A stretch of DNA of 64,000 nucleotides, taken from the NCBI GenBank assembly GCA_026770705.1, contig JANJGN010000150.1:372001-436000 (forward strand), given 5' to 3'. The number at the start of each line of letters is the position of its first letter. Within the stretch, counting starts at the first letter, position 1. This DNA is from Isurus oxyrinchus. Its lineage: Eukaryota. Shown in pieces: positions 24,379-57,749 of the stretch. The translations under genes were made by a program, and so were the position numbers. The notes beneath the pieces are model-generated. The model saw nothing but the letters and a program-made list of their open reading frames with translations. It was not told the origin of the DNA and did not search any database.

Positions 24379-25107
24379 AAAGAACATTGTACAAATTGCA
24401 CAAAATTTCATCTGATGCCTGTGTCTCATGCTAACATGAAGTTCATGCACACAACAGGAATATTTCTCGCTGTTTCTCTGCAGCAAGACAGCTTTGGAAT
24501 CACACCACCCACTGGCAAGAGTGTGCAGTTACAATGTGACATGTTTACATTGGAAATTTCTATTATAAAGATGGACAGAGGAATTCATCTGATTGGAAAA
24601 CGTGACAACAGGAAGCTATGTCTTTGAGCCAAGTATTTTGCAGCAAAACAAGAATTTTAATCTTTAAATATCTACAGAACAGGCTGAGCATTTTAATCAC
24701 TTGAGTTAATCAATGTAATTTTATTCATAAGCCAAATGCTTCTTACAATCTATCGCAGCATGAAAAGGTGCAGCATTCAGAAAGCACATTCCAATCAGAG
24801 AACAGAGTTTAGCAACGTCACATTTCTGTTCATTCCTATTCGATGAACTATTTCAAAAGGAAATTGGACGGAAATTGGAAATAAATTTGCAGGGATACGG
24901 GGATAGAGCAGGGGATGGGAGTGAGTGGATTGCTTTACAGAGAGACAGCATAGACTCAATGGGCCAAATGTCCTCCTCCATTGCTGGAATGACTCGATGA
25001 TACGGAGATGATTATAACCAGGACACTGACCAGTTTCATTACAACTTAACACAACATCACACGTTATTTGTCCGCACTGACTGACCAGATTGTTGCTGTA
25101 CAAAGCT

Positions 25108-25247
25108 TCAAACAGTCTGTCGACTTCCTTTCACTGTTTGTCTCTCCCAGACACAGACTCCAGTGATAGTGATAACCACAGCCACAAGGAATATCACAGC
25201 TCGTATTCCCAGGATCAGGATCACGTGCAGAATCTCTCCTCCACTGT
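25108..25247 (-). CDS. Siglec-like TM and short tail exon (copy D): (D)SGGEILHVILILGIRAVIFLVAVVITITGVCVWERQTVKGSRQTV*
   Basis: Acceptor TTCTCTAG, phase 1, hydrophobic segment with central Arg, TGA at 25110-25108; frame missed by the ORF track. Confidence 0.88.
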
Positions 25248-26091
25248 CTAGAGAACACACAGAAAGAAATCATCACTGACTCTCCGCTTTCAATCTCTCA
25301 CTCTGGCTGAACAATCAAGCTTCATATCACTGCAACATTTGCTGTAATATTGACCCATCCACTGGGATTCAATGTGGAATGAATGTTTTCATTGTAAACA
25401 CTCTAAGAGTGGACAATCGGAACTTTCTCCTTAGCGTGGAACATTGGTGAGAATGGATCATTGTGCTGTTGGACTCCCTGTCCAATGTTTCTCTCCATCG
25501 CTGTGTACAGGATTGTGCTGTAGAAAATTCTGGAAACGTTTAGTGCCGGGTGAAAATCCATCTCAGCCGTGTGTGCGAATCGGGCAGTATCGGGATGGAC
25601 TCCCCCACGGACTTACACACCCCGCTTAATAAACAGTTCCAATCTTTACCCAGAGAGAGGGGAGAATGTGGAACTCGCTCCCACAGGGAATGGTTGAGGT
25701 GAATAGTAGGAAATTAGGAAGTGAAATTGCTTGAAAAGCTTGGAGATGCAAGGGTTAAGTGTTACCGTGCTACCACTGGTGGGAGAGTGTAACTACAGCG
25801 TGATGTTTACATAGGCAATCCCCATTATGAACATGGACATCATGTGAAAAATGGGCACTGGAAAGCTGAGAACTTGGAGGAGGTGTTGCCATGGAAAATA
25901 ATGTGTGTGAGATGTAAAGTTTAGACAGCTTGTCTCTTCATTCAGCAACAATCAAATAAAGATCAGTTAACTTCTATCGACTGTGAAGCACTTTGAGAGG
26001 CATGAGAATGTGGATACTGAGAACGGGCTGCACTGTCAGAGGGTCAGTGCTGAGGGAGTGCTGATGTAGAATGAAGGGTGTCCGTTCTTAC

Positions 26092-26388
26092 CTTGCACAG
26101 TTAGTACGAGGGTCCGCTCCGATGAAACAGATGGATATCTCACTCTGCAGCTGAGATTGTGTCTGTGGTGTTTGAGTGATGGGATCAGGGTCAGAACAGA
26201 AGTATAGGTCAGAGTGACATCATGCTGAGTTACAGTGTTTGAGACTGATCCAGGTACGTCAGTGGGAGTGTCCCAGGTTAAGACAGGTGCTGCTGTTCCA
26301 TTGCACGTTGTGTTGAAGGTGCAGCTTACATCCACACGCTTTCCTGCAATAATTTCAGCAGGGAATATCGTGGGTTTATCTGTGAAAT
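26092..26388 (-). CDS. Siglec-like Ig C2-set exon (copy D) DFTDKPTIFPAEIIAGKRVDVSCTFNTTCNGTAAPVLTW...LSCRVRYPSVSSERTLVLTVQ
   Basis: 297 nt phase 1-1, canonical AG/GT, Siglec domain-2 pattern C..C..P.LTW..LSC. Confidence 0.92.
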
Positions 26389-27116
26389 CTAACAGACAGA
26401 GAATGGATCCTTTTAGAGAAATATAACATGAAGCATCAGTTCAAATAGAAATCACAGTCCCACAAGAAAAAGCACTTTTACAAGGATGATATCAGATCTG
26501 AGAGGTTACAATGATTAGGAGAGAATTTCCTGCTTTGAGACTTTGGTGTTTCTGTCTCTCAGCTTAATACACGTTCACTCCGAGACACTTGAACTGATAA
26601 TAGTGGGTGAGGGTGGTGGAGCAGACCAGAGTTTGGAGTGCACTACCTCATCATTCACTCAGCGATCTGGGCCATTTGTTACTTTGCAATTTGTGGGAGC
26701 TTGCTGTGTGCAAATTGGTTGCTGTGTTTCCCACATTACAATAGTAACTACAATTCAGGAATCAGCTCATTGGCTGTGAAGTGATTTGGTCCATGCTGAG
26801 GTGGTGAAAGGTGCTACAGAAATGTGAATCTTTCTTCTGTCGCTAAGTCAGACTTCGAGACAGGATTAGAGAGATCGATAGGAGTGGATAACCTGATAAC
26901 ATTGATGGACACAGTCAATACATTTAATCATTGATATTAAAGTGAGTATTAGATGTTGCTTTAGGAGTGAACTGGAAGCTATCACCAGGTTATTGAGAAT
27001 CAGACAGTGTGTTATAATAAGCTGTGTTTTGTGTTAATACGTAAACGTCACAGTTTGTGTTATTTCCCATTGAGTGTTGAATGTGAATTGTTGAGTAATT
27101 ATAACACAACACTTAC

Positions 27117-27482
27117 CAGAAACGTGAAGCTGGGTTACAGGGTAATAGTTGTGGCTCGGACCATTGTCAAATTCTATTCTGAAAAAATAAGGTCCTGCAT
27201 CTTCCCGTGTGATGTTGTTTATAATCAGGGAACAGTCGCCATCTTTCAGGTCTCCAGACAGCCGGGTCCGATGGTGGAACCGTGGTAACTCGTGACTGTG
27301 ATCCTTGGAGTGAAAGGCTACAGACGATGTTCCCCGTTCCTCATTATTAAACCAGACTCCACCTCGCGGTTGGTTTTCCAGACACGATGGATAACTGTAG
27401 TGACATGGAATCTGTACACAGGAACCTTCCTGCGCTGTCACCTCTCGTGGACTGTCACCTTTCCACTCTTGTGACAGTCCAG
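27117..27482 (-). CDS. Siglec-like Ig V-set exon (copy D) with essential Arg (YFFRIEF)
   Basis: 366 nt phase 1-1, AQEGSCVQIPCHY, GDLKDGDCSLII, DAGPYFFRIE; canonical splice sites. Confidence 0.92.
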
Positions 27483-27589
27483 CTGGGGAGAGAAATCTCA
27501 ATATTTATCTCTGAATGATTTGTGGATCCACTGAACCCGATATTTACAGATGAGGCTGAATTGGGGGGATGGTCAATACTGAGGAGAAT

Positions 27590-28375
27590 GGCAACAAATT
27601 ATTTTGGCAGGAAGAATAGAAAAACAGAATATTATTTAAATGGAGAGAGGCTGCAGAATGCAGTACAGAGGGATCTGGGTGTCCTTGTACATGAATCACA
27701 GAAAGTCAGCATTCAGGAACACCACGGAATGAGGAAGGCAAGTGGAATGTTGGCCTATATTGCAAAGGGATGGAGTATAAAAGGAGGGAAGTCTTGCAAC
27801 AGCTGCACATGTTGAGATTGTATCAGGAGCAGTGTGTACAGTTCTGTTCTCCTTACTTAGGGAGGGATAGACTCTGCATTGGAGGCAGTTCAGAGGAGGT
27901 TCACTGGGCTGATTCCTGGGATTAAAGGGTTTGTCCTGTGAGGAAATGTTGAGCACGTTGGGCCTGTATCCATTGGAGTTTAGAAGAATGAGGGGTGAGC
28001 TTATTGAAACATATCCGATTCCGAGGGGGCTTGACAGGGTGGATGCTGGGAGGATGTTTCCCCCTCGTGGGGGAATCTAGAACCAGGGAGCACAGTTTCG
28101 GAATGAGGGCTCTCCCATTTAAGACTGAGATGAGGAGGAATTTCCTCTCTCAGAGGGGCGCTAGCCTGTGGAATTCTCTTCCCCAGAGAGCAGTGGAGGC
28201 TGGGCCATTGAATAGACTCAAGGCTGAGTGAGGCAGGTTTTTGATCGACAAGGGAGTCAAGGGTTTGGGGGACAGGCAGGAGAATGGAGTTAAGGCCACA
28301 ACCAGATCAGTGAGAGCAGGCTTGAGGGGCCGAATGGCCTGCTCCTGTCCCTATTTCTTATGTTCCTACATTCTT
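27590..28375 (+). mobile_element. CR1 LINE 3' fragment
   Basis: QRDLGVLVHESQK, RNFLSQR..LWNSLPQRAVEA, GGCCGAATGGCCTGCTCCTG tail. Confidence 0.9.
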
Positions 28376-29029
28376 ACCTTCTAAATATATTAAAGCTGCA
28401 GAATAAACATGCAAGTGACTGACCCGCTCGACCCACCTTCCATCTGGGGGTCCCATGGGGAGGACCCTTCCTGAGCCAGATCCATCAGCCAACATGGTCT
28501 GGATCCGAGCACAGGAGACACGGGGGGGAGTGACTAACAGGCTCCTTGTGACAGGCCCCATCTGTCCAATGGCTGGCTTTCAGCTGCCAAGGCCAGAGTG
28601 GTCCTTGCTAAAACCGGCTCAGGACAGGCCAGGATCCCTGTGCAGACCTCCTCCAGCGCTGCAGCCTCTGTACAAACCCCTCATGCGCTTGTGGAGAGAC
28701 ACAAACAAGGCTGCGCATTACCGAGGAGAATCCCCTCTATGGACTAAGGGGCTGACTCATCACCCTAAACTCAGCAAATGAGGAGGCTCTCGCTCGGTAT
28801 CGGGGCTTGGCATTGGCTCAATAAAAATAATCAAATGACATTTTGGTCAGAAATCTAAGGAGGTTGTACATTCCCTCAAAAATAAGACTCAAGCTGGGGT
28901 CAAGGGTCAAAGGGCAACAACTTATATTTACACATCAACTTTAACATGACAAATCACCCCAAGGTGCTACACAGGAGCGTCATAAAACAAAGTATGTCAC
29001 CCAGACACATGTGGAGATATTAGCGACAG

Positions 29030-30910
29030 CTGGCCAGAAGAGGTCGGTGTTATGGAGAGACAGAGAGAAAGAGACAGAGAGAGAGAGAGAGAGAGAGGGA
29101 GCGGTTTCGGGTGGGAATTCCAGAGCTTAGGTTCCCAGGGAACTGAGGGCACGGCCGGTAATTTTGGAGCGATAGCATCCGGTGATGGTCAAGAGTCTGG
29201 AATAGGAGGAGCGCAGTGATCTCGGGGGGTTGTAGGTGCTATAGTTTGTACAGAGGCTGTAGAGAGGCTACAAATTAGGAAAATTTGGAGAGGCTGGAGG
29301 AGGTTACAGAGCTAGGGAGGGTTGTACAGTATGCAGGTGGTTACAGAGATAGGGAGGGTTGTAGGGGCAGGATGGGTTTACAGAGATACGGAAGGTTGTA
29401 GGGGCTGGAGGAGCTTACAGTGAAAGGGGGGGCAGTGTAGGGACTGGTGGAGGTTACAGGGTAAGGCAGGCTTTAGGGGCCTGAGTAGGTTACAGAGACA
29501 GGGGGTTTGGAGGGACTGGAGAAATTTATAGTAAAAGGGAGCCTTTAGGGGCAAAAGATAGTTACAGAGATAGAGAGGCTGGACGGGAATGGGAAATGTT
29601 ATGGAGATAGGGGGTTTGTAGGTACAGGATGGGGTTATAGGGACTGGATGAGGTTACAGAGATAGAGAGTGCTGTAGGGACTGGAGGAGGTTACAGAGAT
29701 AGAGAGTGCTGTAGGGACTGGGGGATGTTACAGAGATAGGGGTTGTTGCAGCGGTTGGTGAAGGTTACAGAGAAATGGACCGTTGTTGGAGCTGGAAGAG
29801 GTTTATGAGGTAGTGGTGGTTATAGGGACTGAAATAATTTACAGAGATTGGGAGTGTTGTAGGGGCTGGAGGAGGTTACAGAGATAGGGAGCGTTGTAGG
29901 TACTGGAGGAGGATGAGGAGATTACAGGGATAGTGAGGAAACAAAGATGAAAATTTGGACATTGAGACTTTGCTTGACCAGGAGCCAGTCTCGGTCATCG
30001 AGCAGAGCGGGTGATAAGGGAATGGGACTTGGTGTGAGTAAGGACGGGGTCAGCAGTTTTGGATGGCCTCAAGTTTATGGAGTGTAGAGCGTGTGTTGGA
30101 ACAGTCGAGTCTGGAGGTAATGAAGGTGTGGATGAGGGTTTCAGCAGCAGATGAGCTGAGACAGGGTGAAGTCGTACGATGTTACGGAGGTGGAAATAGA
30201 CGGTGTTAGTGAGGGCGCAGATATGAGGCCGGAAGCTCATCTCAGGATCAAATGGGACAACAAAGCTGTGAACAGATTGGCTTCAATCTCAGAGAGCTGT
30301 CAGGGAGAGGAATGGAGTTGGTAGCGAGGGAACAGAGTTTGGAGCGGGGAATGAAGACAATGGCTTCAGTCTTTCCAATATTTAATTGGAGGGAATTTCT
30401 GCCCATCCAGTACTGGATGTCGGATAAGCAGCCTGATAATTTAGCAGCAGTGGAGGAGTCGAGAGAGGTGGTGGTGAGGTAGAGCTGGGGATCCTCAGTG
30501 GACAGGTGAAAACTAACACTGATCAGATGATGCTGCAAAGCCATTGCAAGTGATTCTCTGGCTACGATGAGTTGGATAAGAGTGGAGCCAGGGGAGAGCA
30601 GTCCCACCCAGCTGGACGACAGTGGAGAGGTGTTGGAGGAGGATGGTGTGGTCGAGCGTGTCAAAGGCTGCAGACAGATCGAGAAGGACGAGGAGGGAAA
30701 GTTGACCTTTGTCACAGTCACACAGGATGCCATTTGTGACCTTGATAAGAGCTGTTTCAGCACAGTGGCTGGGGTGGGAACCTGATTGGAGGGATTCAAA
30801 CATGGAGTTCCGGGAAAGATGGGAACGGATTCGGGAGATGGAAACGCGTTCAAGGACTTTGGAGGGGAAAGAGAGGCTGGAGATGGGACGGGGGTTTACA
30901 CGGACAGTGT
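29030..30910 (-). mobile_element. L2 LINE RT fragment with decayed 37-bp minisatellite (29200-29930)
   Basis: SKVLERV..ESLQSG..TALIKVTNGIL..LLVLLDLSAAFDTLDHTILL; LSDIQYWMGRNSLQLNIGKTEAIVF. Confidence 0.88.
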
Positions 30911-31167
30911 GAGGGGTGGAAGGTGTAGTGGGGAGGAGACACTTCACTCAGTGGGGAGGTGTCATCACCCCTCAGCTCGGTTTACGTTACAGCTATGATG
31001 TGGATTCAATCACACACAATAAGCTCATGGATCTGGGAGCAGAAATAGACAAATCATTAAAAATAGTGACGCTGGTTAACACGGCCAAAAAACAAGCAAA
31101 TCAAACACTATTATTTCCCGTTGAGTGTTGGATGTGAATTGTTGAGTAATTATAACACAGCACTTAC

Positions 31168-31554
31168 CAGAAACGTGAAGCTGGGTTTCAGGATAGTTGC
31201 TGTAACTATTTTTGCCGTCAAATTCTATTCTGAAATAATAAGGTCCTGCATCTTCCCGTCTGATGTTGTTTATAATCAGGGAACAGTCGCCATCTTTCAG
31301 GTCTCCAGACAGCCGGGTCCGATGGCGGAACCGTGGTAACTCGTGACTGTGATTCTTGGAGTGAAAGGCAATGATCCCTCTAGACCTTGTATTCCATGTA
31401 TTCCATGTGTACCATTTCACATACCAGATTCCGACACGTGCTCTCCCTACTAAACGTGCTGGATAACTGTAATTACATGGGATCTGTACACACGAACCTT
31501 CCTGCGCTGTCACCTCTCGTGGAGTGTTGCCTTTCCACTCTTGTGACAGTCCAA
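31168..31554 (-). CDS. Siglec-like Ig V-set exon (copy C) with extended Trp-rich C-C' loop and essential Arg (YYFRIEF)
   Basis: 387 nt phase 1-1, open frame, canonical CCCCAG / GTAAGT sites. Confidence 0.88.
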
Positions 31555-32182
31555 CTGGGGAGAGAAATATCAATATTTAACTCTGTGTGTTTTGACGATC
31601 CACTAGACTCGATATCCACCCCCTCCTTCACTGGGGCACAGTGGCTGCAGTGTGGACCATCTACAGGACACACATGGAACTCCCCAAGGTATCACAATGG
31701 ATGGGAGAGAATCCTGGAAACAGGAGTGGACAAGTTCATTCTACATTGGCTGATGGTCCTCAGGACCCTGATTGTGCACAAGCCTGCTATCCAACAGAAC
31801 TGAAGTTGGGGAAAATCCATTTGGAATTCCATTGTCCAGGGCATTGTGTTAACTAGCTGGGTTTGTTTTAAATCTAAAATCTATTTTTGGTCTGTTGCCT
31901 TAAAGGGAGTGTAACTGGGAGTCAGATTAATTAGGAATTTTTGGAGTTATTATAGCTGTCATTGTAGTCTTATGTATGTGCTTGAAATCTTTTATTTTTG
32001 TGACAAATATTTTAATTTATTTTTTTAAATCTCTAAAGATCTTGGTGGACTTATTGCTTCTGAATTCAGTGCACACATCTCATAATAAATACAAATTGCA
32101 AATTCATTATGATCGTGTGACCACCTTTCTCTCAGGGACTTGGTCTGCCTGGGTCACATCACCTGCCAAGTGATAACACTGT

Positions 32183-33493
32183 TGTAATATGCCTTTCAGG
32201 GACAGCAGCATGACATCACTCGAGGGGAAGTGCGTCATGTGATTTTTCAGAACTGGGGTTGGCTTAAGGAAGCTCTCTGTCTATTTGTGTGTGTTAGGTA
32301 TAAGGTATATCTTTCAATTCAAGTTTAGTTTGTATTTCTGTATTTGGGTGTTTTGAAAAGGGGGAACTTGAGTTTTGGTTTCACTTTGGAAGAAGCCGCC
32401 TATCTAATGAGTTTTTATAACTCTTGAAGGGAAGTCAAAACAAACACAAGTTAGAAGAAACTGTGTTGTTGCCTAGCAACAGTGATCCAGAGGGAGGGAC
32501 ACACAGAGACCGAGAAAAACAGAAAAGTACTTTCAGTTCTGTTGAAAGGAGTTGCCAGGAGACGCAGCAAAGGATTGGGACAGATAGTCAGTCCCAAAGT
32601 AAAGATGAAGCCAAAACTATCGAGTGGAACAGGAGAAAGGGCCCAAGAAAACCTTCTAGTCAAATCTGGAAAAGGCCCTGTTAAGTGAAGTTAAGAGTGA
32701 GGAACAGAAGAAGGCTCGAAACATAAAGGGAGAAAGCAGCAAGACACAGACCTAAAGCAAAATAGGCTTGCGAGAAGCCAGAAGATCCTAGGAGACACCA
32801 CAGGTTGGTGACTCATTACTACGGCCGTGTGAAGCCATGGTGTTCCATTGACATGGCTGAGCATTGGAGAGACAGGGCGTGGAAGGAAGGCTGAATGCAC
32901 GTGGCGATCCAGGGGACAGGAACATGGGAAGGAGAGTTTGAAATAGTGAAAGTGGACCCTTGTGGAAGGTGTCTGAGTGAAAGTGTCATGTTGGAGGAGA
33001 TTCCAAAGTGAGTTCTTGGAGAGTGGAGATTGGAAACCCTCATATGGATATGTCAGTTCAGTGAGACTGGTTGGCTCACAGTGTAACAAGCGTCTGGGGT
33101 CAGATGAGGAGGGAGACATAGCATTTGTTCCAAGTGGGTTCTGTCAGTTTCTTTAAGAATGTGTTGTCCCTGACCCCAGGTCGTCTACTGGTTTACATCG
33201 ACTGTGCACTTAGTGTGAACATGAGAGTATAAGATAGCTATTGTAACTTGTGTTCTACTTATGAATCTGCAAAGGTATAGGTCTGAGTGAAGGAGTAATG
33301 TAATATAATTTGTCTTTCCTAGTTTAATAAATGTTTTATTCTTTTGTTAGAAGTTCATCAGATGACTCCTGTGACTCTGTTCAGTAGCCTCACTCCACAT
33401 TCCTAAATAAAAAATAAAAGTTAGGACCTATCAAGCTGAGTTCCACGCTGGGATCTGACTTGCCCAGTAGTAACATCAGCTGGGATGATAACA
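32183..33493 (+). mobile_element. Probable solo LTR-like element
   Basis: TGTAAT...GATAACA termini and internal AATAAA (~33326); no clear TSD. Confidence 0.45.
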
Positions 33494-34296
33494 CCATCCA
33501 GTCCAAGTTTCACTTTGGTCTGTGAGCAGAACACAGCTCACACAGTTTGGCTGCAGGTGTCTCCCAGCTTTCTATCCTTGTATATCTGTTCTCATGTCCC
33601 TGTTCTAAATAACTGAACCCACAATGTATTTACCCAATTCCGTATCAGGGGCTGGTGCCTTTATATCATTATAAAAACACAACATGGTGATCAGCGGTGG
33701 CCAAACATTCTGGCAGCAAGATTCAGTACAGGTATGACGTGGTGAACAGCCTGAGATCGAGCTACATGACATGAGACGACCCTCGACACTTTGGTCAGAC
33801 CATAACAGAGACACAGCATCAGAGAGGGTTGAAATCGCAGTGTACTGACTGCTCAGGAAACCGTTGAAGACACAGTGACGGGAAAGAGCTCAAGTAAAGA
33901 GCTGGGGAGCAGACGGATCCCTCATGGTGAGATTACAGCACACGGCCTGTAGGTCAGTGAGTGGGACAGTGTGTATCGCCAGGACCAGCAGCGGGTTACC
34001 TCAGTCAGGGAAGGCGAGTGACCAGGGTGTGGGCTGGATCGATAGTGAGCGAGGGAGAGTCAAACACACAAAAACCATTATAAAAATCAGCCCAGAGAAG
34101 TTAGTGATTATAACGGGCGGCTTCGAGATTGCTGAACAGCAAATTGAATAAAAAACAAAGACTCCATTACTCCGTGGTGTGTTCCTGCCACAACCCGTCT
34201 TCGTGGGCGGAGCTTCGGAAAAGCGCACAAAAGGGGCTAAAGCGACACTCATCCCAGATCCTGTAGGAGAAGGCAGGTCAAAGGAATATTGTCAGA

Positions 34297-35500
34297 ATGT
34301 CCACGAAATTCCCCAGTTTGAACTGGGATGTAGCTGACCGACTATCTGAATTCAGAATGTTTAAACAGCGTACAGAGCTCTGGTTTCCTGATTCAGGTGT
34401 GACTGAACCAGACGAACAAGCCATAAAAATTCACCTCGCGATTGGGAATGAAGGTCTACCCAGGCTGAACACGTCAGGATTAACAGCTGAAGAGTGAAAG
34501 GATCCCCAATAGATATGGACGACTTTGGAAGACAGGTTCAGAATCAGGTGAAACTCCATATTCATCAACTAGAGTTTATGTCATTTCATCAGCCTACACA
34601 ATCCATAGACCACTTTGTCAGCCAATGTAGAGAAAAGGGTACGCACTGTGATTTCAAACACAGAGCCTGCAGACACAGTGAGTTGGTGATCGCATCCACT
34701 CCCATGGAAGCCTTCCAGAAAGATCTGCTAGATAAGTCCAAAACCTATAGCATTGAAGAGCTACTCAAGGATGGACATAAATACGAAGTAATCCTCGCAG
34801 GTCAACGAAGCTTACAGGTCCTCAGTACAACATCAATTGTTGACACACTCACTAGAACATCCAAACCTAGTGAGACGTGTGGAAGGTGTGGCCTTCTGCA
34901 GGCACCAAGGAAATGCCCAGCTTTCCACCAATCCTGCAAGGCTTGTGGCAGAAAGGGCCATTGACAGCGGCAGGGCACTAGAGCAAAGGCTGATGCAGCT
35001 ACAAAGAGCCGTGCGCTGATCCAAACAGACCCTACACAACTGGGAACCTTCAAGCAATAAGAATGACCATCCACTATCCCATCAGGAACATATACATGTG
35101 GTGACAGACAAACCAGGAAATGGCGATGATGTGCACGGTGAGACGAGGAGCGGTGATCGATATTCCACCTCTCACACATATCCTGACGTGGCTTGCCAAT
35201 AAATTGTGGATTGTTGTCCTTAATGATCTCTCTCAGCACATCAAATAAACTGAAAATGTCCCATAGGGGTGGGATTTTCTGGCCCCACCCACTGCCAGGA
35301 TTATCCAGTCTGGCCAAAAGCCAATGGATTTATGTTTGTCCCAGTTTCACATACTACCCCATCACCTCAATTCATGACATAACATTGAAATATGCAGAAA
35401 GTTTCAACAATATTGGCAGTTTCAAAGGAGCTCCAACATTACACCTGCTGGAGAATGCAAGTCTGTCAATTGATCTAGTCCATTTAGCACAACACAAATG
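34297..35500 (+). mobile_element. Ty3/Gypsy gag (zinc knuckle) and decayed pol remnant
   Basis: LNW..LSEFRMFKQR.ELWF, CGRCG..CPAFHQSCKACGRKGH double knuckle; stops and frameshifts. Confidence 0.8.
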
Positions 35501-36416
35501 CCAGCAGCTGCAAGAGGGAACGGTGAAAGCTTCTACGCTACAGAAACTGAGGAAGCATCATTGAAGGATCTCCTGATTCAACTTGATCTTATTGGGATGA
35601 GCAAGGCATCTCCCGGGGAGTCATTTTTAAAGGCAGGCAGGGCATCATACTGGAATCTTTGTGATCCGATATTCTTCGACAACTTGGCAGTGGGAAATAG
35701 TGGGGACAGCCTGTCAAGGTAAGAAAATGAGGGGCCCATTGGCAGGTGTCAGTACTGTCCACATGTGTGTCCATCTCAGGCTGTTGGCTGGCCGAGTGCT
35801 TACAAGGATTTGAGATCACCTACAACATTTTGACTGTGACTCTCAGCACTCCACTGTGCCTGCTCTTGGACAATGTCCTTTACCGCGCATCGAAGGGAGG
35901 GCCTGCTGAACCTGCAATGTGAAAAACTGCCCAGGGATATGTCCAATCCAGTGGGACAATTCCAACCTGGCCAATCACCACCTTATTAATTTACTCTTCA
36001 TCATAAGCAAAGTGACAAAGGTGTAATGGACATTAAGAGGCATTGACTCAACAATAACCTGCTCATCCAGCATGGTGGTAGTGCCACACAACACAATGGA
36101 GGGTATCCTCAGTGAAAGGACGGGACTTCATCTCCAAGGTTTCTGTTCAGGACCAGGGTCCTATGGAATCATTACACACAAAGGATCAGCGGTGAGGCCT
36201 AACCGAGGATAAATCAGATCCATTCCCGCTCCTCAATCACCGTACAGTCCTGTTGCATGGAGTCATCGGGCTGAATTTTCCCGTTGGCGAGCAGGGGGCA
36301 GGGCCTGCTCAGCGACACTATGATGATGCGGGATGACATCAGGAGGAACCCCCGACATCATCCTGCCCCATTTAAATATTCAGACCCACCCCCCCCGACA
36401 GGCAGGAAATTCAGCC

Positions 36417-39210
36417 CATAGAGTCATAGATTCACAGGGGTCCACAGCACAGTAAAAGGCCCTTTGGCCCATCGAATCTGCGTCGGTCAAACAAGTACCT
36501 AATTATTCTAATCCCATTAATGCACTGGGCCCAAAGCCTTGTATGCGATGGCATCACAAGTGCACATCCAAATACTTCTTAAATGTTATGAGGGTTTCTG
36601 CCTCTCCCACCCTTTCAGGCAGTGAGTTCCAGATTCAATCTATGCAACATCCTGGTAAATCTCCTCTGCACCCTCTCTAGGGCAATCACATCCTTCCTAT
36701 AATGTGGGTTCCAGAACTGCACGCAATATTCTAGCTGTGGCCTAACCAGTGTTCTATACAGTTCCAGCATAACCTCCCTGCTCTTATATTCTATCTCTCG
36801 GCTAATAAAGGCAAGTATTCCATATGCCTTCTTAACCACCTTATCCACCTGTCCCACTACTTTAAGGGAACGGTGGACATGCACACCAAGGTCCCTCTGA
36901 TCCTTGTTACTTTCCAGGGTCCTACCATTCATTGTCTATTCCTGTGCCTTGTTTATCCTGCCCAAGTGCATCACCTCACACTTATCCAGGTTAAATTCCA
37001 TTTGGCACTGATCAGCCCATCTGACCAGCCCGTCTATATCCCCCTGTAATCTAAGGCTATCCTCTTCATTATTTACCACCCCATCAATTTCCATATCATC
37101 CGCGAAGTCACTGATCAACCTTCCTACATTCAAGTTTAGACCGTTTATATATACCACAAACAGCAAGGGACCCAACACCGATCCCTGTGGAACCCCACTG
37201 GACACAGGCATCCAGTCACAAAAACACCCGTCGACCATCACCCTCTACTTCCTGGCACTCAGCCAATTCTGGATCCAATTTGCCAAATTCCCTTGGATCC
37301 CATGTGCTCTTACTTTCGTTTACAGTCTCCCATGCTGGACCTTATCAAAAGCCTTGCTGATGTCCAAGTTGACTATGTCAAATTCATTGCCCTCATCTAC
37401 ACAATTGGTCACCTCTTCAAAAAATTCAATCAAACTGGTCAGACATGACCTCCCTTTAACAAAACCATGCTGACTGTCCTTGATTAATCCCTGCCTCTCC
37501 AAGTGTAGATTAATTCTGTCCCTCAGAATTGCTTTCAATAGTTTCCCCACCACTGAGGTTAGACTGACTGACCTGTTGTTCCCTGGTTTATCCCTTCCTC
37601 CCTTCTTGAATAACGCTACCACATTGGCTGTCCTCCAGTCCTCTGGTACCTCTCCTCTGGCCAGAGATGTATTGAAAATTATTGCCAGCACCCCTGCTAT
37701 CTCCTCCTTTGCCTCACTCAACAGCCTGAGATACATTTCATCCGGGCCTGCAGATATATCTACGTTTGAGACTGCCAGACAACTTAGAACCTCGTTCCTT
37801 TCTATTCTAATTTCTTTAACTATATCACAGTCCTTCTGCCTGATTTCCAAACCCACATTGCCCCTCTCACTTGTGAACACTGACACAAAGTGTTCATTTA
37901 GAACCCTACCTACATCTTCCGGTTCCACACACAAACTACCAATATGGTCCTTAATGGGCCTTACTCTTTCCCTAGTTATCCTCTTACTCTTAATGTACTT
38001 GTAAAATAACTTTGGATTTTCCTTCATTTTTCCTGCTAATGTTTCTTCATGGCCCCTTTTTGCTCTACTAATTTTCTTTTTAAGGTCCCCCCTACACATT
38101 CTATACTCTTCTAAGGCTTCCACTGTTTTGAGCCTTTGGTATCTGCCATAAGCCTCCCTTTTTCTCTTTATCCAATCCTGTAAATCTCTCGACATCCAGG
38201 ATTCCCTGGATTTGTTGGTCCCACCCTTTGCCTTTACTGGAATATGTTGGCCCTGTACTCTCCCCACTTCCTTCCTGAATGAGTCCCATTGCTCTGACGC
38301 AGATTTCCCTAAAGGTAGCTGCTCCCAGTTCCACTCTGGCCAAATCATATTTGATCTTATTAAAATCAGCCTTCCACCAATTGAGAACTCAGATTTCTGG
38401 CCCATCCTTGTTCTTTTCCATAACAACCTAGAATCTAATGGAATGATGATCACTATCTGCACAATGCTCCCCCACTGATACGTCTACAACTTGCCTGGTT
38501 ACATTCCTTAAAATTTACTCCAGGACCGACCCCTCTCTTGTAGGATTTTCTATGTACTGGCTTAAAAATCTCTCCTGGATGCATTTTAACAATTCTGCCC
38601 CCTCTAAAACTATCACACTATGACTAACCCAGTTATTGTTGGGGAAGGTGAAAAGCCCCACCATTACAACCCGATTATTTTTATACTTCTCTGAATTTTG
38701 CCTTTGTATCTGCACTTCTATTTCTCTGAGTGTCATTGGGCCTGTAGAACACTCCCAGCAAGCTGATTGTTCCTTATTTGTTTTTAGGTTCTACCCATAT
38801 GGCTTCATTTGAGGAGCCCCCTAAGGTGTCTTCCCTCCTCACTGCAATAACTGATTCCTTGATCAATCTTGCAATACCCCCTCCTCTTTTACCTCCTTCC
38901 CTGTCTTGCCAGAAGACCCTGTATCCTGTAATATTGAGCGGCCAATCCTGCCCCTCTCTAATCCATGTCTGTGACAGCAATGACATCATACATCCATGTG
39001 TTATTTGTGCCCTCAACTCATCTGCTTTATTCGTCAGACTCCTTGCATTAAAGTAAATATAATCCAACTTTGCCACGCTATCTTGTGCCTTAACTGGCCA
39101 ATAATTTCTCTGCCTTCCAGGTTCACTTGCTCTCTCTTCTAATTTTGGCTGTGCATCTCCCTCTGCTGAACCTCCTCTCTGGATCCCATCCCCTGCCTCC
39201 CCAATTGCAT
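36417..39210 (-). mobile_element. CR1 LINE, near-complete ORF2 (APE endonuclease + RT), disrupted
   Basis: YFNARSL.NKADEL, DREGGKRGGGIA, WRTANVVALFKKG, QHGFVKGRSCLTSL, SGVPQGSVLGPLLF, FADD; split over ORFs 38774-39265, 37320-38462, 36936-37241, 36615-36932. Confidence 0.93.
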
Positions 39211-41656
39211 CAAGGGTAAAATGCCAATTGAAACCAGGGACAACATCCAAGAATGACAATCCCACAGATCACTGTGAGCATTTAAAGACACCTCCAGACA
39301 AGGTTACCAACACAAGATCTGGGCGTAAGTGCAGATTACCTCTACTCTTTAGACACTCAAATATTCAACAAATCTATACTGTTATGTAATTGTCAATAAA
39401 ATTGAAAATGATACCAGAAACCTCTTGTTCCCTGTCCTTCTCAAAGATCCATCCCTGCAGCTGGAGCCTTAAGAGTTATTGATGTGGGGCTTAATTTATC
39501 AGATTGTAGAATGATCGGGAACAAAAGGAAGCCATTTGGCCCATCGAGCCTGTGCTGGGCTTTTGAAAGATCTGTCCAATTAGTCCCACACTCACCTCTG
39601 CTCTCTCCTCCACAGCCCTGCAAAATGTCCCCTTCAAGTATTTATCCAGTTCCCCTTCTGAAAGTTCCTGTTGAATCTGCTTCCACCGGCCTTTCAGGCA
39701 GTGAGTCAATGGTCTCTCTCTGAGCTGCAAAGTGCTCAGATTCTGTGAAATTTAAACTCTGCAGCAGATCAGAATCAATCAGGATAACTCAGAATATTTG
39801 ACAGCTTTACACACAGACAGCTTTACCTTCCTTCTCTCTTTCAGTTATCTTGCTCCCTTATTGAAGTATCTAGCATGGTGAGAATGGACAGGAAGTGTGA
39901 CACTGAACAGCCTGTCTATTCTAGGAGCTGCTGTGTTGTCTTCATGGGCAATTTTGAATAAAGGCAGCAACGGGCACATATTTCAGGTCATTGCTATCGG
40001 AGACCTAACATTAGGATAGACTTCATCCCCCAGTTTTTATCCCTGATTTTCTATTCAGCCGATCGCTGCCCTGTCACTGGCTGACCTACACTAACTCTCA
40101 GTCCAGCAATGACTCAAATTTCAAATTCTCATCATTGATTTCTTACCCCACCATCCCCCCTCTACACTCCCGATCCCTGTAACCTCCTCCAACCCTAAAA
40201 ACCTCTGAGATCTCTGCTCTCCTCCAATTCTGCTGTCAGACAGGAGGTCAGTGTGTATCAGTAAGCACAGGGGTGATGGGTGAATGGGACTTGGTGTGAG
40301 TTTGTACACTGGCTCACTGGCTCAATCGGGCAGGATTGAGATGGACTCCCCCACGGACTTACACCCCCCGCTTACTAAACAGTTCCAATCTTTACCCAGA
40401 GAGAGGGGAGAATGTGGAACTCGCTCCCACAGGGAGTGGTTGAGGTGAACAGTATCGATGTATTTAAGGGGCATGAGGGTTGGTAACCAGAGGGACACAG
40501 ATTGATGAACCGGATGGGGAATTTGTTTTGACAGAGCGAGTTGTTGTGATCTGGAAGGTGCTGCCTGAAAACGCGGTGGAAGCAGATCCAATAAGAACTT
40601 TCAAAAGGGAAATTGGATAAACACTTGAAGGAGGAAGATGGGGGCAAAGTGGAGTGGTGGTTAGTGGATCTGATGGGATAGAACATTGAAAGACCTGGCA
40701 CAGGCTCAATGGGCTGAATGGCCTCCTCCTGTGCTGTATCATTCTCCGCTTCCATGATCTCTCCCCCAGTCAGTAACCACTCCAGATCCCTCTTGAAGGT
40801 GACAGAGAAACAGCAACCACCACATCCACTGACAGCACATTCCCGAGGATCCCTACTCTCTGGGAAAAGATGAACTCCCCAACATCCAGCCTATTCCTGC
40901 CACCCGGAGAGTGTAAACCCTTCAGGGAGGCACTGAGGAAGTTTTCAATAAAATGAATTATCAAATCTACCGTTTGAGAAACAATTGAATTCCGAAGAAC
41001 TCACAGCTTGTGTAGCAAACTGGGAAGTAGAGTTGCTGGGAAAGCTGGGAAACACAAGGATTAAGGGCTACAATGCCACCACTGGTGAGAGGCTGTAACT
41101 ACAGCGTGACGTTTACATAGGCAGTCATCATTATAAACAGGGGCTTTGGACATACTGGGAATTATGTGCACGGAAATAGTGAGAACATTATGTAAGCTTT
41201 TCACCAGCAGGAATTCTCTTCCTAAACCCCTCCAACTCTCTCTTACTCTCAGATACACAAAGAAAATCACACAGAATCAGATAAGGAGGAGTTGGGTTGG
41301 TGATTCGTCAAAGGGTTAGGTTTCAGGAAGCTTCTTAAAGGGAGAGAGAGAGAGTTGGAGACGCAGAGAGTATCTGTGAGAGCCTCTAAACATCTGAGTG
41401 TCTGTAATAGTAATTTCCATATTCTTCCATAAATATGAATGGGAACACAAATCCCAGAATTCAGGCTAACTCTCCAGTGCAGTAGTGAGGGAGGTCAGGT
41501 AACCCATGAGGGAGTGAGTGTTAGTGTTTGTGTGTGAGTGTGTCTTTGTGTGTGGTCATATATGTGTGTCTGCACGTGTCTATTTAGGTGTGTATGTTCG
41601 ATGGTGTTTGTGTAGTGTTCGAATCTGAGAGAGATGTTGAAGTCTGTGTAACTCAC

Positions 41657-41809
41657 GTTCCACAGTAATGGTTATGAACCCCTCCACTGCTCCATGTTCA
41701 TTCTCTGCCACACACTGATAGTCTCCAGTGTCCCTGGAGGTAATGTGAGGAATCACCAACCACAGCTCATTGTTGGAACTTGTTTTGTTCATTTGGACAT
41801 TCAGATGTC
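41657..41809 (-). pseudogene. 5'-truncated third Ig (C2) exon of Siglec-like copy B
   Basis: HLNVQMNKTSSNNELWLVIPHITSRDTGDYQCVAENEHGAVEGFITITVE with donor retained; homology to 50046-50327 stops at ~41809; N-terminal half and acceptor deleted. Confidence 0.85.
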
Positions 41810-42132
41810 ATGGCAGGAATCAAGAAGCCCGTTCACAGGATTACCAACAGAAAGTGAACAACAATTTATACTTAATGGGAAGAGAGTGCTGATTGGTTGG
41901 CAAGTGGTCTCTGATAGGTGGAGGTGTTGCCATGGAGAATGGTGTGTGCGAGATGTAAAGTTTAGACAGCTTGTCTCTTCATTCAGCAATAATCATATAA
42001 AGATCAATTAACTTCTATCGACTTTGAAGCACTTAGAGAGGCCTTAGAATGTGGATACTGAGAATGGGCTGCACTGTCAGAGGGTCTGCGCTGAGGGAGT
42101 GCTGATGTAGAATGAAAGGTGTATGTAATTAC

Positions 42133-42429
42133 CTTGCACAGTTAGTACGAGGGTCCGCTCCGATGAAACAGATGGATATCTCACTCTGCAGCTGAGAGTG
42201 TGTCCATGGTGTTTGAGTGATGGGATCAGGGTCAGAACAGAAGTATAGGTCAGAGTGACACCATGCTGAGTTACAGTGTTTGAGACGGATCCAGGTACGT
42301 CAGTGGGAGTGTCCCAGGTTAAGACAGGTGCTGCTGTTCCATTGCACGTTGTGTTGAAGGTGCAGCTTACATCCACACGCTTTCCTGCAATAATTTCAGC
42401 AGGGAATATCATGGGTTTATCTGTGAAAT
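42133..42429 (-). CDS. Siglec-like Ig C2-set exon (copy B)
   Basis: 297 nt phase 1-1; nearly identical to 26092-26388 and 53224-53520. Confidence 0.92.
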
Positions 42430-43288
42430 CTAACAGACAGAGAATGGATCCTTTTAGAGAAATATAACGTGAAGCATCAGTTCAAATAGAAACCACAGTC
42501 CCACAAGAGAAAGCACTTTTACAAGGATGATATCAGAACTGAGAGGTTACAATGATCAGGAAAGATTTTCTTGCTCTTTGGCAGTAGTGTTTCTGTCTCT
42601 CAGCTTAATACACGTTCACTCTGAGACATGTGAATTGAGAACACTGGATGAGAGAAGAGGCTCAGACCAGAGATTGGAGTTAAAAGCAGAATACTGTGGA
42701 TGCTGGAAATCTGAAACCAAAACAAAAATTGCTGGAAAGACTCAGCAGGTCTGACAGTATCAGTGGAGAGGAAGACAGGGTTAACGTTTTGAGTCCGTAT
42801 GACTCTTCATCAGACCAGAGGTTTGAGTTCACTGGCTTCTCATTTCCTCAGTGATCTGGGTGATTTATTACATTGTGGTTTGCTGGATCTTGCTGTGCAC
42901 AAACTGCCTGCTGTGTTTTACATCTGTGACTACAATTCAGGAATAATTTCATTGGCTGTGAAGGGATTTGGATCCTCCTGAGGTGGTAAATTGCGCTGCA
43001 GAAATGCACATCTTTCTTTTATCGATACGTCAGACTTTTAAACAGGACAGGAGAGATTGATGGGAGTGGATAACCTGATAATACAGTTAATGCTTTTCAT
43101 CATTGATATTAAAGTGAGTATTAGATGTTGCTTTAGGACTAAACTGGAAGCCATCACCAGGTTATTGAGAATCAGACAATGTGTTAAAACAAGCTGTGTT
43201 TTGTGTTAATATGTAAACGTCACAGTTTGTGTTATTTCCCATTGAGTGTTGAATGTGAATTGTTGAGTAATTATAACACAGCACTTAC

Positions 43289-43657
43289 CAGAAACGTGAA
43301 GCTGGGTTACAGGGTAATAGTTATGGCTCGGACCATTGTCAAATTCTATTCTGAAAAAATAAGGTCCTGCATCTTCCCTTCTGATGTTGTTTATAATCAG
43401 GGAACAGTCGCCATCTTTCAGGTCTCCAGACAGCCGGGTCTGATGGCGGAACCGTGGTAACTCGAGACTGTGATCCTTGGAGTGAAAGGCTATGGGAGCC
43501 CAGGGAATCTGTTTCTCATTATTAAACCAGACTCCACCTCGTGGTTGATTTTCCAAATGTGCTGGATAACTGTAATGACATGGAATCTGTACACACGAAC
43601 CTTCCTGCGCTGTCACATCTCGTGGAGTGTCACCTTTCCACTCTTGTGACAGTCCAA
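43289..43657 (-). CDS. Siglec-like Ig V-set exon (copy B) with essential Arg
   Basis: 369 nt phase 1-1; GLSQEWKGDTPRDVTAQEGSCVQIPC...GDCSL...YFFRIEFDNGPSHNYYPVTQLHVS. Confidence 0.92.
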
Positions 43658-44519
43658 CTGGGGAGAGAAATATCAATATTTAACTCTGGATGGTTTGTAG
43701 ATCCACTAGACTCGATATCCACCCCCTCCATCACTGGGGCACATTGGCTGCAGTGTGGACCATCTACAGGACACACATGGAACTCCCCAGGGGTTTCATA
43801 ATGGATGGAAGAGAATCCTGGACACAGGAGTGGACAACTTCATTCTACATTGGCTCATGGTCCTCAGGACCCTGTTTAGTGAAGCCAGTCTTCCACCCAA
43901 CACAGTGTTTACAAGACACACAGGGAAACTGTGTAAACATCTCATCTCTCTAAACTGACTGGTTTGTCTTCGGTTTAACTTTCAGTTATTTTACTTCCTT
44001 ATTATGGTTGCTATGGTGAAACTGTGCAGGAAGTGCGAGGGCTGGACTCTCTGTCTATTCTCACTGCAGCTGTGATGTAGTCGTGGTGGTTTTCAGTAAA
44101 ATGAAACCCTCTGATCTCCTCCATCGCCGAGGTTTAGGGAGTGAATTCCAGAGCTCAGGCCCCAGGCAGCTGAAGGCCCGGCCGCCAGTATTGGAGTGAT
44201 GGGAATCGGGGGATGGTCAAGAGGCCGGAATTGGAGTAACACAGAGATCTGGGACGTTGGTTGGGAGAGTTGCAGGAGGTTACAGAGATAAGGAGGCAGT
44301 GTGAGGCAATGGATGCATTTGAACAAAGAGATGTGAATCTTAAGTTTGAGATGTTGTAGGACCAGGAGTCAGATAGTTTAGGGGTGATGGGTGAATGGGA
44401 CTTGGTGTGAGTTTGTACACTGGCTCACTGCTGAATCAGTTCCCAATCACAGCTCAATAAGAATGATCTTTTACAAAGACTATTCACCATAAATCTGTCT
44501 GAGCTGACGATGATATTAC

Positions 44520-44559
44520 CTTGGAGAAGTGACAGGAGGAAGTAAGATTTCCCGACCAT
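44520..44559 (-). CDS. Signal-peptide exon, copy B (MVGKSYFSLSLLQ-, phase 1)
   Basis: ATG 44559, donor CAAG|GTAATA; paralog of 56127-56166. Confidence 0.85.
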
Positions 44560-45009
44560 TATCCACTCCCAGATATTTCATCAGATTCTCACTCTGAAGT
44601 TCTGAAAGAGAAAGGAGTTAATGAGACCTCACCTCTTGTCCGACAGCTCTCGAGAGATCAGATCTGCTTTTAGACAATGTCTTCACAGAATAGTTTGATT
44701 CTCTGTGGGATGATAGGTGTTCTGCAGAGAGTTACAAGGCTTTAAGAAGGAAAAACAATGAAGGATTTGCATTTCCATAGCACCTTTCACCACCTCAGGA
44801 TGTCCCAAAGCTCATGTCTCTGCACTTCCCTCATCCCTTGAGCTCGAAAGATGTTCTGTACAACAGACTTGAGCCTCACACCCAGATCTCAATAATCAGT
44901 AGAAATCTTTCAAAGGCGTCAATCATTGGAATCTGTCTTTATAAAGTCACAACATCAACAAAGGACGATGTTGGTGGTGGAAGTGAATTCCAATCGTTCC
45001 GTTACTTAC

Positions 45010-45155
45010 CCAGGACCTGTCCGACTGCTCGCCTGGGGAGGAACTGCCCACACGCTCTGCTTGGGCTGAATGACCTCTTCCTGTGCTGCTCCCTCTGTGT
45101 GTTTAATTAGAAAGGGCTGATGTGTCACTGTGAGACAAAATGAGGAAGTGGGTAA
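45010..45155 (-). promoter_or_regulatory. Promoter and non-coding exon 1, copy B
   Basis: Donor TGG|GTAAGT at 45009; AT-rich TATA-like element ~45105; PU.1-like GAGGAAGT at ~45142; duplicated at 56611-56750 and 63290-63399. Confidence 0.6.
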
Positions 45156-45369
45156 TCAGTGAGAAGATTGAGGATGTTTTGTGCTCTCAGCAAAACGTTT
45201 ACCATGTGATGATCTGTCAGCTCATATTTGGGCAGCTGTAGTCATCAAGTTTCTCCATTGGCTCCATGGGATTAGACCCCTCCCCCTCACCTCAGAGGCT
45301 GAAGCGCAGGCGATAGACTTCCCAATACAGGTCTCTGGCCGTATGATACATGTTGACAATCCCTGATAT

Positions 45370-48180: not shown

Positions 48181-48200
48181 GATTGTTGCTGTCCAAATCT

Positions 48201-57685: not shown

Positions 57686-57749
57686 GTAAACCGAACCCAT
57701 TGGTCAACTAAAATAGTGACAAGGGTTGAATAAACTGGTGATGAGGTGA

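What the first reader, a model, noticed from the sequence alone, without database searches (positions are those of the whole stretch)
25108..44559. Deletion-fused chimeric gene able to encode a three-V-domain Siglec (SP-V-C2-V-V-C2-TM)
Seen: only one promoter and leader (45010/44559) and one TM exon (25247) bracket three intact V exons and two intact C2 exons. At ~40320-40327 the pre-TM intron of copy B (homologous to 48670-49270) joins directly, at an AATC microhomology, to the leader-V intron of the next paralog (39805-40319, homologous to 55500-56037), so B's TM and C's promoter/leader are gone. Between V(C) and V(D), paralog homology ends ~60 nt from each exon, implying a second deletion. 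All exons are phase 1 with canonical sites, so skipping the broken exon gives 1896 nt = 631 aa in frame. Inference: either a multivalent receptor with three differently specific Arg-bearing V domains or a cassette of alternatively spliced V exons on one activating TM. Fusion by deletion recalls the human SIGLEC14/5 fusion allele.
Basis: partly seen in the sequence, partly recalled or inferred. Interest (0 to 1): 0.8.

Follow-up and report, generated by a model that had tools for sequence, protein, structure and literature searches.

The report
Deletion-fused shark Siglec gene pair
Two neighbouring shark immune-receptor genes of the sialic-acid-lectin (Siglec) family have been joined by one small deletion, so that one start and one membrane anchor now bracket three intact sugar-binding exons, but stacked sugar-binding domains are already common in shark Siglecs and it is not yet shown that all three reach one protein.

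Summary
On the minus strand, one leader (44559-44520) and one arginine-bearing TM exon (25247-25108) bracket three intact V exons and two intact C2 exons. All internal exons are phase 1 with canonical splice sites and sum to 1896 nt (631 codons plus stop). The join at 40324-40327 (AATC) links a pre-TM intron to a leader-V intron exactly as described.

V(C)-V(D) adjacency needs no second deletion. V(C) groups with the first V domains, and V(B)/V(D) with the second V domains, of two-V Siglec models annotated in great white and basking sharks. So one deletion fused a single-V gene B, which lost its TM exon, to a canonical two-V activating gene, which lost its leader.

RNA contigs from one animal (three runs) show V(C)>V(D), V(D)>C2 and C2>TM splices. 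What splices onto V(C) was not seen, so B's leader is inferred and the three-V protein is unproven. The 40324 join was not checked in reads.

Multi-V Siglecs are widespread in elasmobranch annotation, and this scan already noted them on other DNA of this genome. The interleaved V-C2-V-V-C2 order was in 0 of 114 elasmobranch models examined. I never joined the exons into one sequence.

The parts
44560..45149 (-). Upstream/promoter block of gene B, 94% identical to the block upstream of copy A (55987-56750 also covers the leader)
   Evidence: 44380-45149 vs 55987-56750, 94.2%; promoter activity not tested
44520..44559 (-). Leader exon of gene B (MVGKSYFLLSLLQ, phase 1 out); the only leader upstream of the five Ig exons
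43289..43657 (-). V(B): intact V-set exon of V2 type, with the FRIEF arginine
42133..42429 (-). C2(B): intact first C2-set exon, 291 of 297 nt identical to C2(D)
41657..41809 (-). Remnant of B's second C2 exon: 3' half only, acceptor lost, in-frame TGA at 41810 just upstream; donor GT kept
40324..40327 (-). Deletion junction, AATC microhomology: B's pre-TM intron joined to the leader-V intron of the next gene
39792..40323 (-). Surviving 5' part of the leader-V1 intron of gene CD (82.5% to A 55488-56044); it starts 83 nt after where the leader donor would lie
36615..39265 (-). LINE fragment with reverse-transcriptase ORFs, same orientation as the gene, inside the 10.6-kb C2(B)-V(C) interval
31168..31554 (-). 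V(C): intact V-set exon of V1 type with a long Trp-rich C-C' loop; the arginine aligns to the sialoadhesin FRFE arginine
   Evidence: RNA joint 31168>27482
27601..30947 (.). Repeat-filled V1-V2 intron: dispersed repeat 27601-28310, 37-nt satellite about 29240-29920, RT fragment 30513-30947
   Evidence: contigs of runs X1-X3 cover it
27117..27482 (-). V(D): intact V-set exon of V2 type
   Evidence: RNA joints at both ends
26092..26388 (-). C2(D): intact first C2-set exon
   Evidence: joint 26388>27117 in X1, X2 and X3
25108..25247 (-). Terminal TM exon with an intramembrane Arg (ILILGIRAVIF...) and a 15-residue tail, then the stop
   Evidence: the X3 loose end at 26092 equals 25218-25247

Best explanation
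One microhomology-mediated deletion fused two neighbouring genes of a tandem Siglec-like cluster in a lamniform-type shark. By analogy with the A-B spacing it was about 4 kb.

The upstream partner, B, keeps its promoter block, leader, V, first C2 and half of its second C2 exon. It lost its TM exon. The downstream partner is a canonical two-V activating family member: V1 = V(C), V2 = V(D), one C2, and a TM exon with a buried arginine. It lost its promoter and leader. So V(C)-V(D) adjacency is the family's old layout, not a second deletion.

Shown: the structure, the junction, the frame compatibility, and splicing of V(C) to V(D), V(D) to C2 and C2 to TM in RNA contigs.

Inferred: because no other leader lies in the window, transcripts holding V(C) most likely start at B's promoter. 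Every internal exon is symmetric in phase 1. Such transcripts could therefore encode SP-V-C2-V-V-C2-TM (631 aa). With V(B) and C2(B) skipped, they could encode the ordinary SP-V1-V2-C2-TM. Either product would pair through the TM arginine with an ITAM adaptor, as activating Siglecs do; that mechanism is recalled, not tested here.
For: - Dot-plot and pairwise alignments fix the junction and the homologies.
- There are 2 leaders and 2 TM exons in the window.
- Exon table with phases: 1896 nt in all.
- The two flanks of the junction are not homologous to each other, and each is only 82-95% like the other copies. A collapse of paralogs would not produce this join.
- RNA contigs: joint 27482>31168 with CT..AC ends in X1 (side 30); the same joint with one variant letter in X2 and X3; joint 26388>27117 in X1, X2 and X3; an X3 loose end at 26092 identical to the first 30 nt of the TM exon.
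- Contigs of X1-X3 also cover the V(C)-V(D) intron.
- Two- to four-V models are common in elasmobranch annotation: 22 of 114 proteins by my HMM count.
- Great white models P0166 and P0168 read (partial V1)-V2-C2-ArgTM. P0151 has a V(C)-like V1 followed by a V(D)-like V2.
- In the tree, win_VC sits in a 7-row clade of V1 domains (SH-aLRT 97), and win_VB and win_VD sit with V2 domains.
Against: - No read or contig was seen joining C2(B) or the leader to V(C). The only read-laying run covered 25621-31620, and loose ends at 31554 were not among the rows shown.
- The runs are contigs from one sample, labelled only 'RNA?'. They differ from the window by about 1-3%, so they come from another individual or a close species.
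- The short sides of the V>V joints are 20-30 nt, and the last 20 nt are shared by all V exons. The upstream V of the X2 and X3 joints could therefore be another V.
- C2 exons are 98% alike. Contigs laid on C2(D) carry B-like letters at 26157 and 26220, so paralogs cross-map.
- V-joint contig depths were roughly a tenth of the V(D)>C2 joint depths, though contig depth is a poor measure.
- Two sense-oriented LINE fragments in the long introns could end transcripts early.
- Great white models with this V1-V2 unit start inside V1 without a leader, so a missing 5' end is a recurring unknown.
- The V2 grouping in the tree has support of 84-93 only, which is not strong.
- The 40324 junction itself was not checked in reads.
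Confidence: 0.6

Rival explanations
1. The downstream V1-V2-C2-TM unit is transcribed from a 5' exon or promoter of its own that I did not recognise. This could be a diverged leader or a repeat-borne promoter in the 8-kb repeat-rich stretch 31777-39791. On this reading B is a dead remnant and no B-CD fusion transcript is made.
For: V(C)>V(D) splicing is seen, but its upstream partner is not. The interval is full of LINE and other repeats that can carry promoters. Great white models of the same unit also lack a leader.
Against: No second leader-like sequence lies in the window, even allowing 10 of 42 mismatches. V(C) holds no in-frame ATG, so a new first exon would have to supply both a start and a signal peptide in phase 1. 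The surviving intron piece 39792-40323 shows that the original leader was upstream of the breakpoint.
Confidence: 0.22
2. Two separate deletions built the locus, and its main product is a three-V receptor SP-V-C2-V-V-C2-TM with three different specificities.
For: All exons are intact and in frame. Homology stops about 60 nt from V(C) and V(D). The three V domains differ mainly in the C-C' loop and near the G strand, and all keep the arginine.
Against: V1-V2 tandems with the same V-type order occur in basking and great white shark models, so the second deletion is not needed. The C2(B)>V(C) splice has not been observed. 0 of 114 elasmobranch models have a V after a C2. dN/dS of 0.4-0.9 on about 120 codons does not separate selection from drift.
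Confidence: 0.15
3. The join at 40324 is an assembly error, and the real genome has B's TM exon and a leader for the next gene.
For: The cluster is made of tandem 11.6-kb units flanked by 33-nt satellites, which is hard to assemble. No read was laid across 40324.
Against: Mis-joins of paralogs switch copies within homologous sequence. Here two non-homologous intron positions meet at 4 bp, and both flanks are unique diverged copies. The downstream half of the locus is covered by independent contigs.
Confidence: 0.06
4. A decaying locus. Transcripts exist but are leaderless or rare by-products, and no receptor is made from them.
For: Broken exons are frequent in this cluster (scan note s1-864012). 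Copy A has lost a canonical cysteine. An out-of-frame ATG lies 22 nt before the leader ATG.
Against: Five Ig exons and the TM exon, 1856 nt in all, are free of stops and keep all splice sites, the cysteines and the arginine. The spliced forms are present in three runs of one sample.
Confidence: 0.15

Closest known systems
Human SIGLEC14/SIGLEC5 deletion-fusion allele
   Same: A deletion between neighbouring tandem Siglec paralogs removes the end of one gene and the start of the next, leaving one transcription unit. PMC6288428 (passages seen) lists a 'SIGLEC14-SIGLEC5 fusion (SIGLEC14 deletion)' and cites Yamanaka 2009.
   Different: As I recall, the human fusion arises by recombination between highly similar sequences and yields a normal-length protein. 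Here the breakpoints lie in non-homologous introns (4-bp microhomology) and the exon count rises, putting Ig exons of both genes in series.
Siglec-12 (two V-set domains) and the elasmobranch multi-V Siglec-like models
   Same: Tandem N-terminal V-set domains in one Siglec. [quoted passage not shown] NCBI names many shark two-V models 'Siglec-12'. V(C)-V(D) matches their V1-V2 order.
   Different: Those have all V domains at the N-terminus, before any C2. 0 of 114 elasmobranch models had a V after a C2. The fused reading here would be V-C2-V-V-C2.
Activating Siglecs with a charged TM residue (Siglec-14, -15, -16 type)
   Same: A short tail and a basic residue inside the TM helix. The same TM exon type occurs in great white models P0166, P0168 and P0192.
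   Different: Adaptor pairing (DAP12 or a related chain) is recalled from mammals. It was not tested for sharks.
Interleaved V-C2-V-C2 models in other vertebrates
   Same: Automatic models with a V after a C2 exist in an elephant ('Siglec-12 isoform X4'), a turtle, a gecko and teleosts.
   Different: These are distant (29-39% identity to V(C)), unverified predictions. Some may themselves be read-through fusions of tandem genes.

Membership tests
[quoted passage not shown] | N-terminal V-set Ig domain of the Siglec type | tested here: met
   Pfam V-set and Ig_CD22 match all three V exons above cut-off. The best solved relatives of V(C) are sialoadhesin, MAG, Siglec-5, -10, CD33, -8 and -7 (E 8e-14 to 3e-9).
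[quoted passage not shown] | Conserved arginine on the F strand that binds the sialic acid carboxylate | tested here: met
   In the HMMER alignment, the R of V(C) 'YYFRIEF' aligns with the R of sialoadhesin 'YNFRFEI'. V(A), V(B) and V(D) all have FFRIEF. That this is the essential arginine is recalled.
[quoted passage not shown] | Siglec cysteine pattern in V (two Cys near strand B, one in strand E) and a following C2-set domain | tested here: met
   V(B), V(C) and V(D) hold GSCVQIPC and DGDCSL. The C2 exons match Pfam C2-set_2. Copy A has DGDRSL instead. Disulfide pairing itself was not tested.
[quoted passage not shown] | Actual binding of sialylated glycans | not testable with these tools
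   Needs recombinant V domains on glycan arrays.
Activating (adaptor-coupled) immune receptors | Basic residue within the TM helix and a short tail without ITIM | tested here: met
   The TM exon reads ILILGIRAVIFLVAVVITITGV, then CVWERQTVKGSRQTV and the stop.
Activating (adaptor-coupled) immune receptors | Association with an ITAM adaptor | not testable with these tools
Deletion-fusion genes between tandem paralogs (SIGLEC14/5 type) | A breakpoint joining the body of one paralog to the body of the next, with loss of the intervening 3' and 5' ends | tested here: met
Deletion-fusion genes between tandem paralogs (SIGLEC14/5 type) | A transcript that crosses the breakpoint and joins exons of both partners | not tested
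   The only read-laying run covered 25621-31620. The joints 42133>31554 and 44520>31554 were outside it.

The most novel reading that the evidence does not exclude
The fused unit is expressed from B's promoter and makes an activating receptor with three arginine-bearing lectin domains in an interleaved order (V-C2-V-V-C2-TM). That would be a natural multi-headed Siglec assembled in one step by a 4-bp-microhomology deletion. Exon skipping could additionally give a set of one-, two- and three-headed forms on the same anchor.
Probability: 0.25. Interest if true: 0.6.

Novelty: new variant of a known kind. Interest (0 to 1): 0.42.

Why it matters
It is a clean, base-resolved example of how a birth-and-death immune-receptor cluster can change domain architecture in one step. 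A small intron-to-intron deletion strings together symmetric phase-1 Ig exons of two genes. If the fused transcript exists, it would extend the already unusual multi-V Siglecs of sharks to an interleaved layout not seen in the annotated elasmobranch models I examined. It would also give a natural test case for how lectin-domain number and spacing affect glycan avidity. If the fused transcript does not exist, the locus is an ordinary casualty of cluster turnover.

Tried and rejected
- My first C2 acceptor (26379/42420) was wrong by 9 nt.
- I looked for a usable in-frame acceptor in B's half C2b exon. Only four weak AG sites without a pyrimidine tract were found, and a TGA lies at 41810, so inclusion is unlikely.
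- dN/dS among the four V exons (0.40-0.94) rests on too few sites to decide between selection and drift, so I draw no conclusion from it.
- A search with V(C) alone in the 90%-clustered collection gave only 3 short proteins. None showed what precedes a V(C)-type exon.
- Four literature searches were run. The two on shark or elasmobranch Siglecs listed no paper describing elasmobranch Siglec architecture. That is a statement about those two searches of the held library only, and supplements were closed.
- I considered that the V>V joints come from paralogous two-V genes elsewhere. This cannot be excluded for the X2 and X3 joints (sides 20-26 nt). It is less likely for X1 (side 30), and intron contigs of the same locus are present.
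- I did not fold any domain. The sequence matches to solved Siglec V domains were clear enough.


Full report
WHAT IS THERE

The window holds a tandem cluster of Siglec-like genes on the minus strand. Scan notes on the same window call the genome a shark's and report a hepcidin gene copy nearby. The closest public proteins are NCBI models from great white shark, with basking shark models next.

tblastn with the window's own exon peptides finds four V exons, three first-C2 exons and two second-C2 exons. Copy A (56166 to 48201) is complete: leader, V, C2, C2b, TM. Below it lie the following, with exact edges:

| Exon | Coordinates | Length (nt) |
|---|---|---|
| Leader B | 44559-44520 | 40 |
| V(B) | 43657-43289 | 369 |
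| C2(B) | 42429-42133 | 297 |
| Half C2b exon | ending at 41657 | remnant |
| V(C) | 31554-31168 | 387 |
| V(D) | 27482-27117 | 366 |
| C2(D) | 26388-26092 | 297 |
| TM exon (with stop) | 25247-25108 | 140 |

- All acceptors are AG and all donors GT.
- The leader ends in phase 1 and every internal exon is a multiple of three.
- Without the half exon, the lengths add to 1896 nt, which is 631 codons plus a stop.
- I added lengths only.

A mismatch-tolerant scan finds only two leaders (56166, 44559) and two TM exons (48340, 25247) in 64 kb.

THE JUNCTION

- 40324-41809 is homologous to A's C2b-to-TM interval (48671-50198, 83.8%).
- 40324-40454 is homologous to D's pre-TM intron (25578-25708, 94.7%).
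- 39792-40327 is homologous to A's leader-V intron (55488-56044, 82.5%), and its last 58 nt are homologous to B's own (44380-44437).
- AATC (40324-40327) belongs to both alignments.

The breakpoints lie 331 nt before a TM exon and 83 nt after a leader donor. If the B-to-next-gene spacing matched the A-B spacing (3642 nt from stop to ATG), about 4 kb was lost.

The two flanks are not homologous to each other, and each is a diverged, unique copy. A collapse of paralogs during assembly is therefore an unlikely cause, but no read was laid across the site.

B's second C2 exon has lost its 5' half and its acceptor. An in-frame TGA sits where homology begins, and there is no credible in-frame acceptor.

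THE 'SECOND DELETION'

Paralog homology does stop 57 nt after V(C) and 61 nt before V(D). The 3.7 kb between them is a dispersed repeat, a 37-nt satellite and a reverse-transcriptase fragment. The comparative evidence points elsewhere.

*Domain counts in public models.*
- A profile-free search of 1.84 billion representatives with the V(C) exon gave, as its best hits, proteins with 2, 3 or 4 matched V stretches.
- Their sequences show SP-V-V..., SP-V-V-V-C2... and SP-V-V-V-V-C2-TM layouts.
- A second search returned 114 proteins, all NCBI or UniRef entries from sharks, rays and skates.
- By my own single-exon HMMs, 22 of the 114 have two or more V domains (15 with two, 5 with three, 2 with four), 85 have one and 7 have none.

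*Closest lamniform models.*
- Great white P0166 and P0168 read (partial V1)-V2-C2-TM, with the same arginine TM.
- P0151 has a V1 with V(C)'s peculiar Trp-rich loop followed by a V2 almost identical to V(D).
- Basking shark P0002 and P0156 read leader-V1-V2.

*Tree.*
- In a tree of 55 V domains, win_VC lies in a 7-row clade (SH-aLRT 97). The other six members are five first V domains of two-V lamniform models and the single V domain of great white model P0165.
- win_VB and win_VD lie among the second V domains of the same models (support 84-93, weaker).

V(C)-V(D) is therefore the V1-V2 pair of an ordinary two-V family member, and one deletion suffices. D also lacks the C2b exon: there is a gap of about 700 nt relative to A and B between 25872 and 25950. 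This matches the V-V-C2-TM build of P0166 and P0168.

Caveat: these are automatic gene models.

RNA

The run search listed 21 runs with coded names, and none held half of the words. I laid X1-X3 (one sample, organism A) and X4 (organism B) on 25621-31620. All four are Logan contigs labelled 'RNA?'.

Spliced forms with canonical ends were found:
- 26388>27117, i.e. V(D) to C2(D), in X1 (2 contigs), X2 (1) and X3 (2).
- 27482>31168, i.e. V(C) to V(D), in X1 (1 contig, side 30).
- The same joint with one replaced letter in X2 and X3 (sides 20 and 26). That letter turns the junction codon into the Val seen at the V1-V2 junction of P0002, P0153 and P0160.
- A cryptic variant 27394>31168 in X2.
- An X3 loose end at 26092 that equals the window's 25218-25247, the start of the TM exon.

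Against over-reading these results:
- The three positive runs are one sample.
- Contigs differ from the window by about 1-3%.
- The last 20 nt of all V exons are identical.
- C2 exons are 98% alike, and contigs laid on C2(D) carry B-like letters at 26157 and 26220.
- One X2 loose end at 26092 leads into a C2b-type exon of another copy.
- X4 showed no depth on V(D).
- Contig depth cannot rank forms.
- Contigs of X1-X3 also tile the V(C)-V(D) intron. This fits pre-mRNA, but DNA carry-over is equally possible.

What splices onto V(C)'s acceptor at 31554 was not among the rows shown.

HOW IT MOST LIKELY WORKS

*Shown.* A fused locus in which one leader and one Arg-TM exon bracket V, C2, V1, V2 and C2. 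Its downstream unit is transcribed and correctly spliced in at least one animal.

*Inferred.*
- V(C) holds no ATG and no other leader is present. The transcripts therefore most likely start at B's promoter block, which is 94% identical to A's.
- After C2(B), the next competent acceptor is V(C), 10.6 kb downstream.
- Every internal exon is symmetric. Both the full chain (SP-V-C2-V-V-C2-TM) and skipped forms such as SP-V1-V2-C2-TM stay in frame.
- Exon skipping is at least annotated in this family: great white P0189 reads leader directly followed by C2.
- Sense-oriented LINE fragments in both long introns could curtail transcripts.

*Odds.* About 0.6 for the single-deletion, B-promoter-driven reading as a whole, and about 0.25 that the three-V protein is really made.

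MEMBERSHIP AND COMPARISON

The V exons meet the sequence criteria of Siglecs (Pfam V-set and Ig_CD22).
- The best solved relatives are sialoadhesin, MAG and Siglec-5.
- The arginine aligns with that of the sialoadhesin FRFE motif.
- The Siglec cysteine pattern is present.

Glycan binding and adaptor pairing are untested.

The nearest known analogue of the event is the human SIGLEC14-SIGLEC5 deletion fusion. The nearest analogue of stacked V domains is Siglec-12. Both are named in passages of PMC6288428 that I read.

The difference here is the interleaved order. 0 of the 114 elasmobranch models have a V after a C2. Such orders do appear in automatic models from an elephant, a turtle, a gecko and teleosts.

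Earlier notes of this scan already report genes with two to seven tandem V exons on other pieces of this genome. That agrees with what I found independently. Multi-V as such is not new to the scan.

VERDICT

This is a new variant of known kinds: a deletion fusion between tandem Siglec paralogs, and a multi-V shark Siglec. Interest is moderate. The structural event is clean and instructive, while the striking product remains to be shown.

Noticed in passing
window 54951-54953 (minus strand, V exon of copy A): Copy A reads DGDRSL where B, C and D read DGDCSL. The strand-E cysteine of the Ig disulfide is replaced by Arg (codon CGT), so the otherwise complete copy A may fold abnormally.
   Followed up: partly
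window 44581 and 56188 (minus strand): Both leader exons carry an ATG 22 nt upstream of the signal-peptide ATG, in another frame (MKYLGVDN...). Great white models P0024 and P0165 start with that peptide.
   Followed up: partly
window 25872-25950 versus 41139-41917 and 49540-50332: Gene D lacks the roughly 700-nt segment that holds the second C2 exon in A and B. Its build, V-V-C2-TM, matches great white models P0166 and P0168.
   Followed up: partly
window 25087-25708 versus 48180-48801: The TM-exon regions of D and A are 96.8% identical over 622 nt, well above the 76-93% of the other A-D matches. This suggests gene conversion or a more recent common origin of the 3' ends.
   Followed up: no
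window 23696-24377, 45369-46140 and 46354-46855; also about 56975-57690, 63489-64000 and 1506-1792: A 33-nt satellite flanks each gene unit of the cluster. The unit period from A to B is 11,607 nt.
   Followed up: partly
window 63260-63488: An inverted copy (94.8%) of the 230 nt that lie 360-590 nt upstream of the leaders of A and B, next to satellite. It may be the remnant of an inverted gene unit.
   Followed up: no
window 6609-6887 (+ strand): A weak V-set-like match (about 30% identity to the V exons) on the opposite strand, probably an exon of a different Ig-family gene.
   Followed up: no
window 26027-26063: Many odd back-joints and loose ends of RNA contigs pile up just downstream of the C2(D) donor, mostly in X4 and also in X1 and X3. 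The loose-end letters look like the 33-nt satellite unit.
   Followed up: no
window 27809-27883: Contigs of X1-X3 replace 73 nt of the dispersed repeat in the V1-V2 intron with 36 other letters. This is an indel difference between the window and the sampled animal.
   Followed up: no
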